A stretch of 59,422 nucleotides of DNA from Octopus bimaculoides (Eukaryota). Location: positions 14,826,765-14,886,186 of the forward strand of contig NC_068988.1 in assembly GCF_001194135.2 (NCBI RefSeq), written 5' to 3'. The notes under the pieces are model-generated. The model had not been told where the DNA came from. It did not search any database and saw nothing but the letters and a program-made list of their open reading frames with translations. Every line of letters begins with the position of its first letter. Within the stretch, counting starts at the first letter, position 1. The translations under genes and the position numbers were made by a program. Positions 9,454 to 36,680 of the stretch are shown here, in pieces.

Positions 9454-10495
9454 ATGTGTCTGTGTATGTATGTATATACCTCTCTTTGTATCTCTCTCTC
9501 TCTCTCTCTCTCTCCCTGTATATATATATATATGTATATATATAATGTTTATATGTATATGTGTGTGTGTGTGTGTGGTTGGGTCTATGTATGTGTAAGT
9601 TTGTAAGTTTCATGTATGTCTATGTATACATGCACACACACACAGATAAATATGTAGCTAGATAAGATGAAAAGATAGACAGGAGATACAGTAGACTGAA
9701 TACATAATTATATGTGGCTGAATCTGATAAATTTGCAGGAAATGGTCCTCTCTTTCCAGCTGACTTGTTTGTTTATATCTGTGTGTGTGTGTGTGTGTGT
9801 GTGCGTGCGTGTGTGTGTGTNNNNNNNNNNNNNNNNNNNNNNNNNNNNNNNNNNNNNNNNNNNNNNNNNNNNNNNNNNNNNNNNNNNNNNNNNNNNNNNN
9901 NNNNNNNNNNNNNNNNNNNNNNNNNNNNNNNNNNNNNNNNNNNNNNNNNNNNNNNNNNNNNNNNNNNNNNNNNNNNNNNNNNNNNNNNNNNNNNNNNNNN
10001 NNNNNNNNNNNNNNNNNNNNNNNNNNNNNNNNNNNNNNNNNNNNNNNNNNNNNNNNNNNNNNNNNNNNNNNNNNNNNNNNNNNNNNNNNNNNNNNNNNNN
10101 NNNNNNNNNNNNNNNNNNNNNNNNNNNNNNNNNNNNNNNNNNNNNNNNNNNNNNNNNNNNNNNNNNNNNNNNNNNNNNNNNNNNNNNNNNNNNNNNNNNN
10201 NNNNNNNNNNNNNNNNNNNNNNNNNNNNNNNNNNNNNNNNNNNNNNNNNNNNNNNNNNNNNNNNNNNNNNNNNNNNNNNNNNNNNNNNNNNNNNNNNNNN
10301 NNNNNNNNNNNNNNNNNNNNNNNNNNNNNNNNNNNNNNNNNNNNNNNNNNNNNNNNNNNNNNNNNNNNNNNNNNNNNNNNNNNNNNNNNNNNNNNNNNNN
10401 NNNNNNNNNNNNNNNNNNNNNNNNNNNNNNNNNNNNNNNNNNNNNNNNNNNNNNNNNNNNNNNNNNNNNNNNNNNNNNNNNNNNNNNNNNNNNNN

Positions 10496-10785
10496 AGATT
10501 CCACTGAAATTAGATAAATAACCTTCGAGCAGATAGTCAGCAGCGCCGCCTGGCTAAGGCTTGGCTACTCTGCATTGACAAGGGGCAACACCCTGAAACT
10601 AGTCTAGTCTGCAGATGCCAAACCAGCAGGGGGACACTGCTGACCTCCCCTGTTCGAAGGTTATAAAGGACACAGGTTTCGTGTGTCACATAGCTAGCTA
10701 GAGGCGATGGCTTCTTGGAGCTAATTCACGGCAGCTTTCGTCCTAATTTTGGGACTGCCATGTTGGCTTGGCGATAACTATTAAT
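10496..10785 (+). mobile_element. Hammerhead-containing structured repeat (retrozyme / Penelope pLTR-like), left end hidden in gap
   Basis: 15-bp stem 10518-10532/10650-10664 (one G.U) and 8-bp stem 10536-10543/10637-10644 enclose a hammerhead motif. Downstream GACACA/TGTGTC hairpin; ends at (TA)n. Confidence 0.7.
10569..10615 (+). ncRNA. Minimal type-I hammerhead ribozyme, U3-A8 core variant
   Basis: TCTGCA TTGACAA GGGG-CAACA-CCCT GAAA CTAG-T-CTAG TC TGCAGA. Stem I 6 bp, core UUGACAA, stem II 4 bp, palindromic stem III, predicted GUC cleavage after 10609. Confidence 0.75.
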
Positions 10786-10904
10786 ATATATATATATATA
10801 TAAACAAATTGGCTGCTTATTTCTCTGGAACTGGTCAAGATGGTATAGACATCACTGATGAGAACTCAATAAGTTTCGAAAATCATTTAAGGTTGTTCCT
10901 ATTT

Positions 10905-11165
10905 ATTCTTTTCTTTTTGTTCTTTTATTTGTTTCAGTCATCTGACTGCAGCCATGCTGGAGCACTGCTTTTAGTCAAACAAAGTGATCCCAGGACTTAT
11001 TCTTTGTAAGCTTAGTACTTATTCTATCGGTCACTTTTTACCAAACTGCTAAGTTATGGAGACATAAACACACCAACATCAGTTGTCAAGTGTACTAGAC
11101 AAACACAGACATGCAAGCATATACATATATATATGACGGGCTTCTTTCAGTTTCTGTCTACCAAA
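10905..11165 (-). mobile_element. Family A SINE, 3' half
   Basis: ttttcttttatttgtttcagtcatctgactgcagccatgctggagc... matches the tails of other copies. Confidence 0.8.
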
Positions 11166-11186
11166 TACACACACAAACACACACAT

Positions 11187-11227
<41 letters not shown>

Positions 11228-11254
11228 GATATATATATATTTTATATATAACAA

Positions 11255-11503
11255 ATACAAAATGGGACAAGAACGCAAAACATCCACACAGTTAGGTGAT
11301 ACAAAAAAAGGACAACAAAACATCCAGATAGACGATACAAAGAAAACAAGGACGAGTCATTCGGAGTTTTCTTTCCTCAGTCGAGTTCCAGATTATCTTT
11401 GCAATATCGGCTCNNNNNNNNNNNNNNNNNNNNNNNNNNNCATATATATATGACGGGCTTCTTTCAGTTTCTGTCTACCAAATACACACACAAACACACA
11501 CAT

Positions 11504-11544
<41 letters not shown>

Positions 11545-12030
11545 GATATATATATATTTTATATATAACAAATACAAAATGGGACAAGAACGCAAAACAT
11601 CCACACAGTTAGGTGATACAAAAAAAGGACAACAAAACATCCAGATAGACGATACAAAGAAAACAAGGACGAGTCATTCGGAGTTTTCTTTCCTCAGTCG
11701 AGTTCCAGATTATCTTTGCAATATCGGCTCGTTATACTCGAGATTGTTCCAATCTGGCCAGCCCCAAGGAAAAACTAAGAGCATTAGATTCCTTGGAAGA
11801 AAGCAGCAAATGTATACGAAAACAAGGATGAAAAAAAACAGAGAATGTTACACAAATACAAATAACAGGACATATTAAGGACGAATTATATTAAGCTGGT
11901 GTGTGTGGAAGTAAAGCCTTACGTCAGGGATACAAGATTTCACAGGTTCAGGGAGGAATATAGATGTTACATGGACAGCAGCCAAACCAGAAAAGAAAGG
12001 TCAGGCTTGGCTGAACACTGGTCATGTAGA
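11255..12030. repeat. Unclassified interspersed repeat, partly duplicated across a gap
   Basis: 11123-11413 is repeated at 11441-11733. Internal hairpins agattg/caatct and ccaaggaa/ttccttgg. No protein motif recognised. Confidence 0.5.
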
Positions 12031-12984: not shown

Positions 12985-13760
12985 CTATATTGTCATCTAA
13001 ATTACGCAAAAATTAAAATAACACTGACATCTCATGTTAACAGATATATTTATCAAAATTACATAAAAATATATCTTGAAATACTAAAGAGTAAATTTAT
13101 TCAATAAAATTGCCATTGGCTTCAACCACGGCCTCCTGACGACTTCGGAATCTCCTGCAACTCTTCTTGACAGTCTCCTCATTTAAGCTGATGAATGCTG
13201 CCATAATCCTTGCCTTCAGTTCATCTTTAGTGTTACAAGGAGTTTTGTTAGTCTCTTGCTCAACTGCACCCCACACATAATAATCAAGGGGATTGCAGTC
13301 TGGGGAGCTAGGTGGCCAGATGCTAGAAGTGATGTGGTCACACACATTGTCTGACAGCCATGACTGGGTTCTCCTGTTTGTGTGGCATGGTGCAGAGTCC
13401 TGTTGCCAGACACAGGGTCTTCCAGCAGCCCCCTCTTGACCCAGGGCAGCACTACCTCCACCAGGCACTTGATGTGGGCCTCCATGTTAAGTCTTAGGCC
13501 ATGCAGGAAGATGAATGGAGACATAATGTCACCATCACTATTGATCACTCCAAACACCATAACATTGATTGGATGTTTGATTTTTATCACTCTCGGTACA
13601 TGTCCTCAGCTTGGAACCTAAACACTCTGAAATGTTCATATTGGAGCTTCTAACATGAATGCCAAGCAGTACAGCATGTTGCTTCCAAATTACTGGCAGA
13701 GTGAATAGCATCATGGTGTTGTTTTTCTCACAGACAGTGCCTAACTGACCCTACTATACT
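12985..13760 (-). mobile_element. Internally deleted Tc1/mariner transposon, DD37D (maT) type
   Basis: QQDSAPCH...WPPSSPDCNPLDYYVWGAVE has 37 residues between the second and third Asp. Upstream frame KHPINVMVFGVINSDG; frameshift near 13435. N-terminal MMLFTLPVIWKQHAVLLGI at 13714 joins the catalytic region directly. Confidence 0.88.
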
Positions 13761-25035: not shown

Positions 25036-25416
25036 GGCGCAGGAGAGCCTGTGTGGTAAGAAGCTTGCTTCCTGACCACATGGGTCTAGGTTCAGTCCTA
25101 CTGCATGGCACCTTCAGCAAGTGTCTTCTGCTATAGCCTCTGGTTGACCAAAGCCTTGTGAGTGGATTTGGTAGATGGAAACTGAAAGAAGCCCTTCGTA
25201 TATATGTATATGTATGTATTTGTGTGTTTTGTTTGTGTCCCCCCCCCCCCACCATTGCTTGACAACCAATGTTGGTGTGTTTATGTCCCTGTAACTTAGC
25301 GGTTCGGCAAAAGAGACCGATAGAATAAGTACTGGGCTTACAAAGAATAAGTCCTGGGGTCAATTTGTTCAACCAAAGGCGGTGAAATGACTGAAACAAG
25401 TAAAAGAATAAAGAAC
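25036..25416 (+). mobile_element. Near full-length family A tRNA-derived SINE with internal TA/TG microsatellite
   Basis: tRNA-like head (gtgtggtaag...ggttcagtcc), ccttcagcaagtgtctt central motif, internal microsatellite and gaaacaagtaaaagaataaaga tail. Confidence 0.88.
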
Positions 25417-35990: not shown

Positions 35991-36228
35991 TTTAATTGGT
36001 TATGCTATGATTTTATTTACTCCATGTACCCAGACATTGTGGACACCTTCTATATATATTTATATATATATATATACAAACTCAAATTAGGCAATCAACT
36101 TTTTGTACATACTTATACAGTTATAAATTCAACTTTAGATACGTATATATGCATTAATATATATTTTCCATATATATCCCACATGGATTCTATTAACATG
36201 TATTATTATTATATTTATTCTTTTATTA

Positions 36229-36680
36229 TTTTATTCTCTTACTCGTTTCAGTCATTTGACTGTGGCCATGCTGGAGCACCACCTTTAGTCGAACAACTTG
36301 ACCCCAGGACATTCTGTGTAAGCCTAGTACTTATTCTATCGGTCACTTTTGCCGAACCGCTAAATGACGGGGATGTAAACACACACGCATTGGTTGTCAA
36401 GCGATGGTGGGAGGACAAACACAGACACAAATAACAAATACATACATACATATACATATATATATATATATATATGACAGGTTTCTTTCAGTTTCCGCCT
36501 ACCAAATCCACTCACAAGGCTTTGGTCGGCCCGAGGCTATAGTAGAAGACACTTGCCCAAGGTGCTATGCAGTGGGACTNNNNNNNNNNTATAGTAGAAG
36601 ACACTTGCCCAAGGTGCTATGCAGTGGGACTGAACCCAGACCATGTGGTTGGTAAGCAAGCTTCTTACCACACAGCCAAA
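36229..36680 (-). mobile_element. Full-length family A SINE (small gap inside)
   Basis: Head and tail both present; head-to-head with the + copy at 36838-37118. Confidence 0.88.

What the first reader, a model, noticed from the sequence alone, without database searches (positions are those of the whole stretch)
10518..10759. Two hammerhead elements 42 kb apart share one RNA architecture with different stem sequences: candidate rod-like self-cleaving RNA family
Seen in sequence: the element here (+) and the one at 52700-53003 (-) have the same order of parts. Outer stem: ATAACCTTCGAGCAG/CTGTTCGAAGGTTAT (15 bp) versus TATGTTTACAAG/CTTGTAAACATA (12 bp). Second stem after an internal loop: GTCAGCAG/CTGCTGAC versus GACAGGCATCTTC/GGAGGTGCTTGTC. 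Then GCTAC-stem I-hammerhead-stem I-TGC, with stem I covarying TCTGCA/TGCAGA versus TCCAGA/TCTGGA. Straight after the outer stem comes AAGGACACAGG, forming a GACACA/TGTGTC hairpin (perfect in the 53041-53161 copy), and later a GGGACTG-containing hairpin. The G.U pairs work only on the ribozyme-sense strand in both elements. Established: minimal type-I hammerheads with palindromic stem III occur in Penelope-like pLTRs and metazoan non-LTR retrozymes, which can yield circular RNAs. Inference: structure conserved through near-complete stem turnover implies selection on RNA fold in a non-coding mobile RNA family, possibly undescribed in cephalopods.
Basis: partly seen in the sequence, partly recalled or inferred. 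Interest (0 to 1): 0.9.

Follow-up and report, generated by a model that had tools for sequence, protein, structure and literature searches.

The report
Hammerhead ribozyme retroelement copies (Penelope/retrozyme type)
The two loci are real, distantly related copies of a short non-coding retroelement that carries a self-cleaving hammerhead ribozyme at the tip of an RNA rod. This is a known kind of element (Penelope-like element / animal "retrozyme"), so the finding is sound but not a new class.

Summary
A relaxed hammerhead (HHR) descriptor finds exactly two complete motifs in the window, at 10569-10615 (+) and 52917-52875 (-), against 0.017 expected per simulated window. Each sits at the tip of a 139-147 nt rod (z -5.0 and -6.6). 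The 11-mer AAGGACACAGG plus a hairpin follows at the same offset in both. About 120 nt of small hairpins then run to a shared end, AACTA(C)TTAAT.

- The first ribozyme has a U3/A8 core (TTGACAA), a variant known from Schistosoma Penelope elements.
- A third, inverted partial copy lies at 53176-53321 (+).
- The second locus is a 1.4-mer tandem of a 330-nt ORF-less unit, joined head-to-head to that inverted copy. This is the classic Penelope-like insertion layout.
- The 5' side of the first element is lost in an assembly gap.

The strand-asymmetry claim fails for element 1. Rfam reports no hammerhead at gathering score. No further copies could be found, so covariation rests on two sequences.

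Best reading: two diverged subfamilies of a non-autonomous, Penelope-mobilised hammerhead retroelement, a new member of a known kind. Cleavage, circular RNA and the mobilising enzyme are all inferred.

The parts
10497..10517 (+). e1: AT-rich leader just before the rod. It is the first sequence after the assembly gap (9821-10495) and resembles the linker of the inverted copy e3 (TTCCACTGAAATTAGATAA vs TTCACTAGAATTATTA).
10518..10664 (+). e1 rod: outer stem of 15 bp, internal loop (ATA / CTCCC), 8-bp stem, then an imperfect helix leading into hammerhead helix I.
   Evidence: CM R1 164 bits
10569..10615 (+). e1 type-I hammerhead. Helix I TCTGCA/TGCAGA. Core TTGACAA (U3/A8 variant). Helix II GGGG/CCCT with loop CAACA. 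GAAA. Helix III ACT/AGT with loop AGTCT, created by a 5-nt tandem duplication TAGTC-TAGTC. Predicted cut after C10609.
   Evidence: U3-A8 variant described in PMC4209133
10666..10687 (+). e1: conserved AAGGACACAGG and the AC-rich hairpin GACACA-GGTTTCG-TGTGTC. It begins 57 nt after the predicted cut.
10688..10785 (+). e1 downstream module: small hairpins shared with e2, ending in the conserved AACTATTAAT about 176 nt after the cut.
10783..10803 (.). (TA)n microsatellite abutting the 3' end of e1. This is AT-rich target DNA of the kind Penelope endonucleases prefer.
   Evidence: PMC8557442, PMC11167929
52828..52966 (-). e2 rod: outer stem of 12 bp, internal loop (AACTT / TCCCC), 13-bp stem with three G.U pairs, then an inner helix leading into helix I.
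   Evidence: CM R1 147 bits
52875..52917 (-). e2 type-I hammerhead. Helix I TCCAGA/TCTGGA. Core CTGATGA. Helix II (C)GAG/CTC(A) with loop CAAAGA. GAAA. Helix III is the palindrome ACATGT (2 bp plus a 2-nt loop). Predicted cut after C52881.
   Evidence: weak Rfam Hammerhead_3 trace
52700..52828 (-). e2 terminal partial unit: AC-rich hairpin 52828-52809, the downstream hairpins, and AACTACTTAAT at 52717-52707. Homology to the upstream unit stops at 52700, 181 nt after the cut.
52967..53013 (-). e2 AT-rich linker between the downstream module and the rod. It starts with the small palindrome AAATCTCTC-T-GAGAGATTT.
53014..53158 (-). e2 upstream copy of the downstream module, 92% identical to 52707-52831. 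With the parts above it makes a 1.4-mer tandem of a 330-nt ORF-less unit.
53159..53177 (-). Extra 18-19 nt copy of the AC-rich hairpin (GACACAGGAAATGTGCCAT) at the junction of the inverted and direct copies. It belongs to a 22-nt period with 2.4 copies. It is either a tail-like fragment or the result of slippage.
   Evidence: (D2)
53176..53321 (+). e3: inverted partial copy holding the linker, the 5' arm of the rod and the hammerhead up to GAAACAT (core 53296-53319). Its outer end lies within 3 nt of the predicted cleavage site.
   Evidence: (I1-I3, I5)

Best explanation
WHAT IT IS
Both loci are genomic copies of one family of short, non-coding retroelements that carry a type-I hammerhead ribozyme. 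They belong to the Penelope-like element (PLE) / animal 'non-LTR retrozyme' kind and represent two diverged subfamilies.

UNIT (about 330 nt in e2)
- A hammerhead at the tip of a 139-147 nt rod that prolongs helix I.
- Then AAGGACACAGG and an AC-rich hairpin, starting 53-57 nt after the cut.
- Then about 120 nt of small hairpins ending in AACTA(C)TTAAT.
- Then an AT-rich linker.

LIKELY MECHANISM
1. A genomic array is transcribed into longer-than-unit RNA.
2. The hammerhead cuts after GUC. In e2 helix III is only the palindrome ACAUGU, so it should need a second copy and act as a dimer. In e1 a 5-nt duplication has built a 3-bp helix III, and the core carries the compensated U3-A8 pair.
3. Monomers may be ligated into self-paired circles.
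4. A Penelope reverse transcriptase/endonuclease supplied in trans copies the RNA into AT-rich DNA. This leaves partial tandems and head-to-head inverted partial copies.

SHOWN: the motifs, the folds, the e1-e2 homology, the ORF-less tandem-plus-inverted layout, and the AT-rich/(TA)n flanks.
INFERRED: cleavage, circularisation, and mobilisation by a Penelope enzyme. Also inferred is that the conserved AC-rich hairpin and the 3' terminus are the enzyme's cis-signals.
For: - Hammerheads are real: the descriptor finds only these two sites, against 0.017 expected.
- Rods are far more stable than shuffles.
- The circular 330-nt e2 monomer folds at -106.3 kcal/mol, z -7.3, 64% paired, GC 41.8%.
- e1 and e2 are homologous end to end (z 6.9).
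- AAGGACACAGG occurs three times only, at the same offset each time.
- The cut-to-3'-end distance is 176 nt in e1 and 181 nt in e2.
- The downstream hairpins are shared, with compensatory changes.
- The rod has 30 shared pairs, 11 changed on both sides, all paired.
- Layout: period-330 direct repeat plus inverted arms at 93-97% identity.
- There is no ORF in the unit.
- There is no Penelope protein remnant anywhere in the window. tblastn with the Poseidon_Ac protein gave a best E of 5.8.

Literature:
- PLE insertions are partial tandems, often with an adjacent inverted copy and a 30-40 bp tail. Hammerheads sit in the pLTR (pseudo-LTR) (PMC8557442).
- The U3-A8 core variant, and pairs of hammerheads 100-700 bp apart on opposite strands, are reported for Schistosoma PLEs (PMC4209133).
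- Animal retrozymes are 170-400 nt, low-GC, self-paired units with type-I hammerheads (PMC7229834).
- Animal retrozymes have been argued to be non-autonomous derivatives of PLEs (bioRxiv 10.64898/2026.07.22.740005).
- A Penelope reverse transcriptase starts inside an AC-rich stem-loop downstream of the hammerhead cut and prefers AT-rich DNA (PMC11167929).
- Octopus genomes hold many Penelope families (PMC13282606, PMC8967140).
Against: - Only 2.5 copies are available, so covariation is a two-sequence comparison on a structure derived from those same sequences.
- Rfam does not call either hammerhead.
- The pair that closes helix II is non-standard: C.A in e2 and e3, G.U in e1. Catalytic competence is therefore uncertain.
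- The e2 locus has only one complete ribozyme in direct orientation, so this locus could not itself release a monomer.
- The e1 rod folds as well in antisense, so part of the 'structure' is simple DNA palindromy.
- e1 has 49.7% GC, above the <45% quoted for retrozymes.
- The 3' ends lie about 120 nt beyond the AC-rich hairpin, not inside it as in Poseidon_Ac.
- The outer end of the inverted copy is not the usual 3' end of a PLE.
- No autonomous partner was seen, and the organism was not established.
Confidence: 0.75

Rival explanations
1. The loci are the 3' ends (pLTR with hammerhead, plus the start of the next unit) of 5'-truncated autonomous Penelope elements. They would not be a separate non-autonomous retrozyme-like family.
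For: Most genomic PLE hammerheads are single motifs from truncated copies (PMC4209133). PLE insertions end a fixed distance downstream of the hammerhead (PMC11167929). The 5' side of e1 is lost in the gap at 9821-10495, so what preceded it is unknown.
Against: In e2 the module downstream of the ribozyme is followed after 145 nt by the linker and the next rod. This gives a 330-nt unit with no room for an ORF. tblastn with a Penelope protein finds nothing in the window.
Confidence: 0.15
2. The two elements are unrelated hammerhead repeats. Their common architecture would only reflect what any hammerhead in a self-paired repeat looks like (convergence).
For: blastn finds only the 11-mer in common. 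Helix I pairing is required of any hammerhead. Rods are common in retrozymes and viroid-like RNAs (PMC7761336).
Against: The global alignment is z 6.9 above shuffles, and the similarity extends outside the ribozyme. The elements share identical GCTAC...TGC flanks of helix I. They share a C-rich internal loop. AAGGACACAGG sits at the same offset in both, and the cut-to-end distances match. The downstream hairpins are shared.
Confidence: 0.03
3. A host-domesticated structured RNA, such as a regulatory self-cleaving element or a hairpin small-RNA precursor, rather than a mobile element.
For: The folds are strong. If transcribed, the long inverted repeat at 52884-53321 would form a double-stranded RNA.
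Against: The tandem and inverted partial copies, the truncation, the 3-8% divergence between copies and the AT-rich/(TA)n flanks are insertion scars, not gene architecture. The neighbourhood is repeat-rich intergenic DNA.
Confidence: 0.03
4. A chance palindrome, DNA-level foldback or assembly artefact.
For: The window is a gap-rich draft (24 gaps, 7306 N), with an exact 177-bp duplicate beside one gap. The e1 rod is nearly strand-symmetric.
Against: Complete hammerhead motifs occur at both sites, against 0.017 expected. The G.U pairs in e2 are sense-specific. The copies differ by substitutions, not by exact duplication.
Confidence: 0.02

Closest known systems
Metazoan non-LTR retrozymes (Cervera & de la Pena 2020, PMC7229834; review PMC7761336)
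   Same: Type-I hammerhead with 6-bp helix I, short helix II and a weak palindromic helix III. The unit is non-coding and about 330 nt, within the 170-400 nt range. GC is low in e2 (41.8%). The predicted circle is highly self-paired. The copies are arranged in tandem.
   Different: Only 1.4 direct units are present, with one complete ribozyme, instead of dimers to multimers. An inverted partial copy is attached. e1 has 49.7% GC. Retrozyme repeats were said to show no conserved motif pointing to their mobiliser, whereas these two subfamilies share AAGGACACAGG plus a hairpin and a common 3' terminus. Circular RNA was not tested.
Hammerheads in the pseudo-LTRs of Penelope-like elements (Cervera & de la Pena 2014, PMC4209133; Craig et al. 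2021, PMC8557442)
   Same: The hammerhead lies in a repeat that forms partial tandems, with an adjacent inverted partial copy. Paired motifs lie about 400 bp apart on opposite strands. The U3-A8 core covariant is present in e1. Positions 15.2-16.2 and loop 3 are palindromic. The flanks are AT-rich or (TA)n.
   Different: There is no RT/GIY-YIG ORF in the unit or the window. Helix I is 6 bp and helix II 3-4 bp, as in 'canonical' animal type-I motifs, rather than the 4-5 bp and 7-8 bp of minimal PLE hammerheads. The closing pair of helix II is not G-C. The inverted copy ends at the ribozyme, not at the element's normal 3' end.
Poseidon_Ac of Anolis: internal start of reverse transcription in an AC-rich stem-loop, with a 'tail' (Frangieh et al. 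2024, PMC11167929)
   Same: An AC-rich stem-loop lies a few tens of nucleotides downstream of the hammerhead cut. The tail in Poseidon_Ac starts about 55-60 nt after the cut, and the hairpin here starts 53-57 nt after it. A short extra copy of that hairpin lies at a copy junction. Insertion is next to AT-rich DNA.
   Different: There is no sequence homology beyond AC-richness. Here the 3' ends of both copies lie about 120 nt beyond the hairpin. The extra hairpin copy may be simple 22-nt slippage.
Sm-alpha SINE-like repeats of Schistosoma and newt satellite 2 (classical animal type-I hammerhead repeats)
   Same: Short dispersed or tandem non-coding repeats with a type-I hammerhead. Their weak helix III favours cleavage as a dimer.
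   Different: No sequence similarity was tested or seen. No tRNA-like part was found. Copy number in the source genome is unknown.

Membership tests
Hammerhead ribozyme, type I | Conserved core C3U4G5A6N7G8A9 ... G12A13A14 ... A15.1-U16.1, H17 | tested here: met
   e2 has CTGATGA...GAAAC...GTC. e1 has TTGACAA...GAAAC...GTC, that is U3/A8. This keeps the 3-8 pair and is a described natural variant (PMC4209133).
Hammerhead ribozyme, type I | Three helices around the core, with helix I open | tested here: met
   Helix I is 6 bp in both. Helix II is 3 Watson-Crick pairs plus a non-standard closing pair. Helix III is 2 bp with a 2-nt loop in e2 and 3 bp with a 5-nt loop in e1. The descriptor gives 2 hits against 0.017 expected.
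Hammerhead ribozyme, type I | Score at or above the Rfam gathering threshold (Hammerhead_1 and relatives) | tested here: not met
   No hit at gathering score. No hammerhead model appears at E<=10 in the 0.5-2 kb searches. The only trace is Hammerhead_3 at 13.9 bits against 48.5.
Hammerhead ribozyme, type I | Self-cleavage at H17 | not testable with these tools
   Needs in-vitro transcription or mapping of RNA ends.
Metazoan non-LTR retrozyme | Short tandem repeats (about 150-450 bp, dimers to multimers), each with a type-I hammerhead | tested here: inconclusive
   e2 has a 330-nt period but only 1.4 direct units and one complete direct ribozyme. The upstream side of e1 is in a gap.
Metazoan non-LTR retrozyme | Non-coding, low GC (<45%), highly self-paired monomer | tested here: met
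   e2 has no ORF over 50 aa. Its GC is 41.8%, and the circular MFE is -106.3 kcal/mol, z -7.3, 64% paired. The visible part of e1 has 49.7% GC.
Metazoan non-LTR retrozyme | Expressed as circular RNA | not testable with these tools
   No transcript data are available.
Penelope-like element (autonomous) | ORF with a telomerase-like RT and a GIY-YIG endonuclease | tested here: not met
   There is no such ORF in or near the elements. tblastn of Poseidon_Ac protein against the window gave a best E of 5.8.
Penelope-like element (insertion architecture) | Partial tandem forming pseudo-LTRs, with an adjacent inverted partial copy at the 5' side | tested here: met
   The direct repeat has spacing 330. 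Inverted arms of 28-40 nt blocks are 93-97% complementary over 52884-53013 / 53176-53321.
Penelope-like element (insertion architecture) | [quoted passage not shown] | tested here: inconclusive
   An 18-19 nt extra copy of the AC-rich hairpin lies at the inverted/direct junction. It is shorter than a tail and can be explained by 22-nt slippage.
Penelope-like element (insertion architecture) | Insertion into AT-rich DNA or (TA)n microsatellites | tested here: met
   e1 ends at (TA)n, 10783-10803. The e2/e3 flanks are AT-rich: TATAATTTG and TTGTTGGAAATAA.

The most novel reading that the evidence does not exclude
These are two subfamilies of an undescribed retrozyme-like family (possibly cephalopod) in which the mobiliser's cis-signals can be read directly. 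One signal would be the conserved AAGGACACAGG AC-rich hairpin, 53-57 nt after the ribozyme cut. The other would be the conserved 3' terminus AACTA(C)TTAAT, about 180 nt after it. Together they would be the recognition and start sites of a Penelope reverse transcriptase. In addition, the inverted copy ends within 3 nt of the predicted cleavage site. That would be a genomic footprint showing that hammerhead-cleaved RNA is used as a template.
Probability: 0.2. Interest if true: 0.55.

Novelty: new member of a known kind. Interest (0 to 1): 0.3.

Why it matters
It is known that animal genomes hold short hammerhead repeats (retrozymes) and that Penelope elements carry hammerheads. How retrozymes are mobilised is still open. 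The 2020 review states that their repeats show no conserved motif pointing to the enzyme they use (PMC7761336). A 2026 preprint argues from vertebrate phylogeny that they derive from Penelope pLTRs (pseudo-LTRs).

This locus adds a small but concrete piece. An ORF-less 330-nt hammerhead unit has been inserted with the typical Penelope scars. Two diverged subfamilies keep a common AC-rich hairpin and a common 3' end at fixed distances from the cut. If that holds genome-wide, it gives testable cis-elements for retrozyme mobilisation in an invertebrate. By itself it is an expected kind of repeat.

Tried and rejected
RFAM
- Scan of the whole window at gathering score: nothing.
- Permissive scans of both regions: only chance miRNA, snoRNA and sRNA hits.

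SEARCH FOR MORE COPIES
- blastn of both elements against the window: none beyond the three known pieces.
- Covariance model R1 over the window: only e1, e2, their antisense strands and e3.
- Other CTGANGA...GAAAC or TTGANAA...GAAAC sites (23265, 30572, 56666, 8929, 25587) lack helices and fail the descriptor.

SEARCH OUTSIDE THE WINDOW
- The 50-aa ORF across e2 has no word-sharing homologue.
- The exhaustive HMMER search gave 5 weak hits to unrelated repeat proteins.
- The one hit that looked like a translated tandem array (P0107) was fetched. It is a 92-bp satellite with no hammerhead core, so it was rejected.
- The metagenome scan for AAGGACACAGGN{3,6}TGTGTC returned 120+ chance matches. Every match with a core-like string upstream came from one bacterial coding region seen mainly in human-gut assemblies, and none had a hammerhead.
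- The viral scan gave 8 matches, which I took to be chance.

OTHER CHECKS
- Organism: the Tc1-like transposase fragment has relatives in spiders, insects, crustaceans and Octopus bimaculoides (67% identity). The species is not settled.
- tRNA scan for a SINE head: none.
- Target-site duplication around the e2/e3 composite: none convincing.
- Type-III reading of e2 suggested by Rfam (upstream CAUGU pairing with ACAUG): rejected because helix I would be a poor hairpin.
- The AAG GAC ACA GG frame reads K-D-T-G in both elements, which could hint at a coding remnant. Both frames stop within 20 codons and nothing else is shared, so this was rejected.
Full report
ABBREVIATIONS
- HHR: hammerhead ribozyme.
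- PLE: Penelope-like element. pLTR: its pseudo-LTR.
- e1: element at 10518 (+). e2: element at 52966 (-). e3: inverted partial copy at 53176-53321 (+).

WHAT IS IN THE SEQUENCE

Element e1 (+ strand) begins right after an assembly gap (N run 9821-10495). Its parts, in order:
- an outer stem of 15 bp (10518-10532 / 10650-10664, one G.U);
- an internal loop, ATA opposite CTCCC;
- an 8-bp stem (10536-10543 / 10637-10644);
- an imperfect helix;
- GCTAC;
- hammerhead helix I, TCTGCA (10569-10574) / TGCAGA (10610-10615);
- TGC.

Element e2 (- strand) has the same order:
- an outer stem of 12 bp (52966-52955 / 52839-52828);
- a loop, AACTT opposite TCCCC;
- a 13-bp stem with three G.U pairs (52949-52937 / 52857-52845);
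- GCTAC;
- helix I, TCCAGA / TCTGGA;
- TGC.

RNAfold returns these nested rods as the minimum-energy structures. e1 gives -72.1 kcal/mol (z -6.6) and e2 gives -55.1 kcal/mol (z -5.0).

THE RIBOZYMES
e2 has the canonical core:
- CTGATGA, then helix II (C)GAG-CAAAGA-CTC(A), then GAAAC;
- the palindrome ACATGT as a 2-bp helix III with a 2-nt loop;
- GTC, with the predicted cut between 52881 and 52880.

- Its core is TTGACAA, that is U3 and A8 instead of C3 and G8. The change is compensated. It is described as a natural covariant in Schistosoma Cercyon Penelope elements (PMC4209133). Work on Poseidon_Ac shows that restoring the 3-8 pair partly restores activity (PMC11167929).
- The sequence after GAAAC is TAGTC-TAGTC, a 5-nt tandem duplication. 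It turns a palindromic ACTAGT, the e2-like state, into a 3-bp helix III (ACT/AGT) with a 5-nt loop. The second GTC lies directly against helix I, so the cut is predicted after 10609.

In both elements the pair closing helix II is non-standard: G.U in e1, and C.A in e2 and e3. Activity is therefore not assured.

Rfam calls neither motif. There is nothing at gathering score and no hammerhead model at E<=10 in the regional scans. The only trace is Hammerhead_3 at 13.9 bits in an 81-nt scan.

I wrote a relaxed descriptor with these requirements:
- helix I of at least 5 bp;
- a C3/G8 or U3/A8 core;
- helix II of at least 3 bp;
- GAAA;
- UH directly before the 3' strand of helix I.
It finds exactly these two sites in the window. 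In 300 first-order Markov simulations of the window the mean was 0.017 hits, and none had two. The hammerheads are real.

ARE THE TWO ELEMENTS RELATED?
blastn finds only the 11-mer AAGGACACAGG in common. A global alignment nevertheless scores z 6.9 above shuffles and runs from the leader to a common end.

The shared features are:
- the GCTAC...TGC flanks of helix I;
- the C-rich loop before the outer stem;
- AAGGACACAGG with a GACACA/TGTGTC hairpin, starting 57 nt (e1) and 53 nt (e2) after the cut. The 11-mer occurs only three times in the window, always in this position;
- a 7-bp hairpin, GGAAGC..GCTTCC in e2 and AGAGGC..GCTTCT in e1;
- a CTGYCR..YGRCRG hairpin next to GGGACTG;
- the terminus AACTA(C)TTAAT, 176 nt (e1) and 181 nt (e2) after the cut.

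They are two diverged subfamilies of one element.

On the MAFFT alignment of the rods, RNAalifold finds 30 common pairs. Eleven are changed on both sides and all are paired in both sequences. Partners slid by 1-3 columns give 32-48% pairing. This agrees with a conserved fold. However, it uses two sequences and a structure derived from them, so it is not an independent test.

The claim that G.U pairs make the fold sense-specific is true for e2 (-55.1 against -45.4 kcal/mol). It is false for e1 (antisense -76.3 kcal/mol).

On the minus strand the region reads as follows.
- 53158-53014: downstream module.
- 53013-52967: AT-rich linker.
- 52966-52828: rod with the hammerhead.
- 52828-52700: downstream module again, 92% identical to the first copy and ending at 52700.

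This is a 1.4-mer tandem of a 330-nt unit. The unit has no ORF longer than 50 aa and 41.8% GC. As a circle it folds to -106.3 kcal/mol (z -7.3, 64% paired).

A third copy, e3, is joined head-to-head to it on the plus strand (53176-53321).
- It holds the linker, the 5' arm of the rod and the hammerhead as far as GAAACAT.
- It is 93-97% identical to e2 in blocks (I1-I3 and I5).
- Its outer end is within 3 nt of the predicted cleavage site.
- The sequence reads GAAACAT|C, so the end would be exactly C17 if two bases were lost.

An extra 18-19 nt copy of the AC-rich hairpin lies at the inverted/direct junction. It is part of a 22-nt period with 2.4 copies.

In the multimeric RNA, e3 corresponds to the segment just 5' of the direct copy, with a 55-nt gap. 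This is the geometry expected if both DNA strands of the target were used as primers on one RNA.

e1 ends at a (TA)n microsatellite (10783-10803). The flanks of the e2/e3 composite are AT-rich.

INTERPRETATION
Partial tandems that form pseudo-LTRs are the described architecture of Penelope-like insertions. So are an adjacent inverted partial copy, an optional short tail, a hammerhead in the repeat, and AT-rich or (TA)n targets (PMC8557442, PMC4209133).

Poseidon_Ac protein nicks and extends both strands of AT-rich DNA. It starts reverse transcription inside an AC-rich stem-loop downstream of the hammerhead cut (PMC11167929).

Short (170-400 nt), low-GC, self-paired, non-coding tandem units with type-I hammerheads are the animal non-LTR retrozymes. 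These accumulate as circular RNAs in a coral, a mussel and the axolotl (PMC7229834). They have been proposed to be mobilised by Penelope elements (PMC7761336). They have also been argued to be non-autonomous Penelope derivatives (bioRxiv 10.64898/2026.07.22.740005).

The e2 locus fits the overlap of these two descriptions: a retrozyme-sized, ORF-less unit carrying Penelope-type insertion scars. No Penelope protein remnant is present anywhere in the window, so the enzyme would act in trans.

What e1 was attached to upstream is unknown because of the gap. It could be the end of a truncated autonomous element.

MECHANISM: SHOWN VERSUS INFERRED
Shown:
- the motifs, folds and homology;
- the unit size and the tandem/inverted layout;
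- the flanks.

Inferred from the named families:
- transcription of longer-than-unit RNA;
- cleavage after GUC, by e2 as a dimer through the ACAUGU palindrome and by e1 possibly as a monomer;
- ligation into circles;
- copying by a Penelope reverse transcriptase into AT-rich DNA.

More speculative: the conserved AC-rich hairpin and the conserved 3' terminus are the cis-signals for that enzyme, and the end of e3 at the cut site records a ribozyme-cleaved template. Two points count against the analogy with Poseidon_Ac. The copies end about 120 nt beyond the hairpin, not in it. The extra hairpin copy may be simple slippage.

SEARCH FOR RELATIVES ELSEWHERE
Every attempt failed.
- The e2 ORF has no homologues.
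- The exhaustive HMMER search gave only spurious repeat proteins. One of them was followed to its DNA and proved to be an unrelated 92-bp satellite.
- The metagenome and viral pattern scans gave chance matches only.

The organism could not be fixed. A Tc1-like transposase fragment at 13097-13468 (-) has arthropod relatives and an Octopus bimaculoides relative. If the window is from an octopus, many Penelope families are known there (PMC13282606, PMC8967140). None of the four hammerhead-cephalopod/Penelope searches of the held library returned a paper describing cephalopod hammerhead repeats.

VERDICT
The feature is real and the description is largely correct, but it belongs to a known kind.

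The points worth keeping are:
- the U3-A8 core in e1;
- the 5-nt duplication that builds helix III in e1;
- the Penelope-type scars on a retrozyme-sized unit;
- the AC-rich hairpin and 3' end conserved between subfamilies;
- the inverted copy ending at the predicted cut.

All of these need genome-wide copies and RNA data before they carry weight.

Noticed in passing
window 53315-53325 (+): The inverted partial copy e3 stops at GAAACAT|CAAATT, within 3 nt of the predicted hammerhead cleavage site (GAAACATGTC|). If two bases were lost, the end is exactly C17. This could be the footprint of a ribozyme-cleaved RNA template, but it is a single case.
   Followed up: partly
window 10600-10609 (+): A 5-nt tandem duplication TAGTC-TAGTC sits inside the e1 hammerhead. 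It converts a palindromic 2-bp helix III (ACTAGT, as in e2's ACATGT) into a 3-bp helix III with a 5-nt loop. That would allow cleavage as a monomer.
   Followed up: partly
window 53125-53177: The AC-rich hairpin region has a 22-nt period with 2.4 copies. One copy is extra compared with the other unit at 52811-52828.
   Followed up: partly
window 13097-13590 (-): Two overlapping ORFs encode fragments of a Tc1/mariner-type DDE transposase (PF13358 relatives). The best named relatives are from spiders, insects, crustaceans and Octopus bimaculoides (67% identity over 61% of the query).
   Followed up: partly
window 10913-11177, 36212-36517, 39553-39837, 41041-41329, 40308-40518, 25156-25384, 58081-58337, 52103-52247 and others: A SINE-like interspersed repeat of about 150-300 nt has at least 12 copies at 72-92% identity. 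One lies just 3' of e1, beyond the (TA)n. ARAGORN finds no tRNA-like head.
   Followed up: partly
window 11124-11300 and 11441-11617: An exact 177-bp duplicate lies on either side of a 27-N gap (11414-11440). It is most likely an assembly artefact.
   Followed up: no
whole window: There are 24 N gaps totalling 7306 of 59422 bases, many of them bordered by microsatellites. The non-N GC content is 37.4%. One gap (9821-10495) removes whatever preceded e1.
   Followed up: yes
L129 1690-8727 (ENA ERZ26052378 contig ctg5354): An unrelated 92-bp satellite of at least 76 copies is read through as a 908-aa ORF. It surfaced only through a spurious peptide match and has no hammerhead core.
   Followed up: yes
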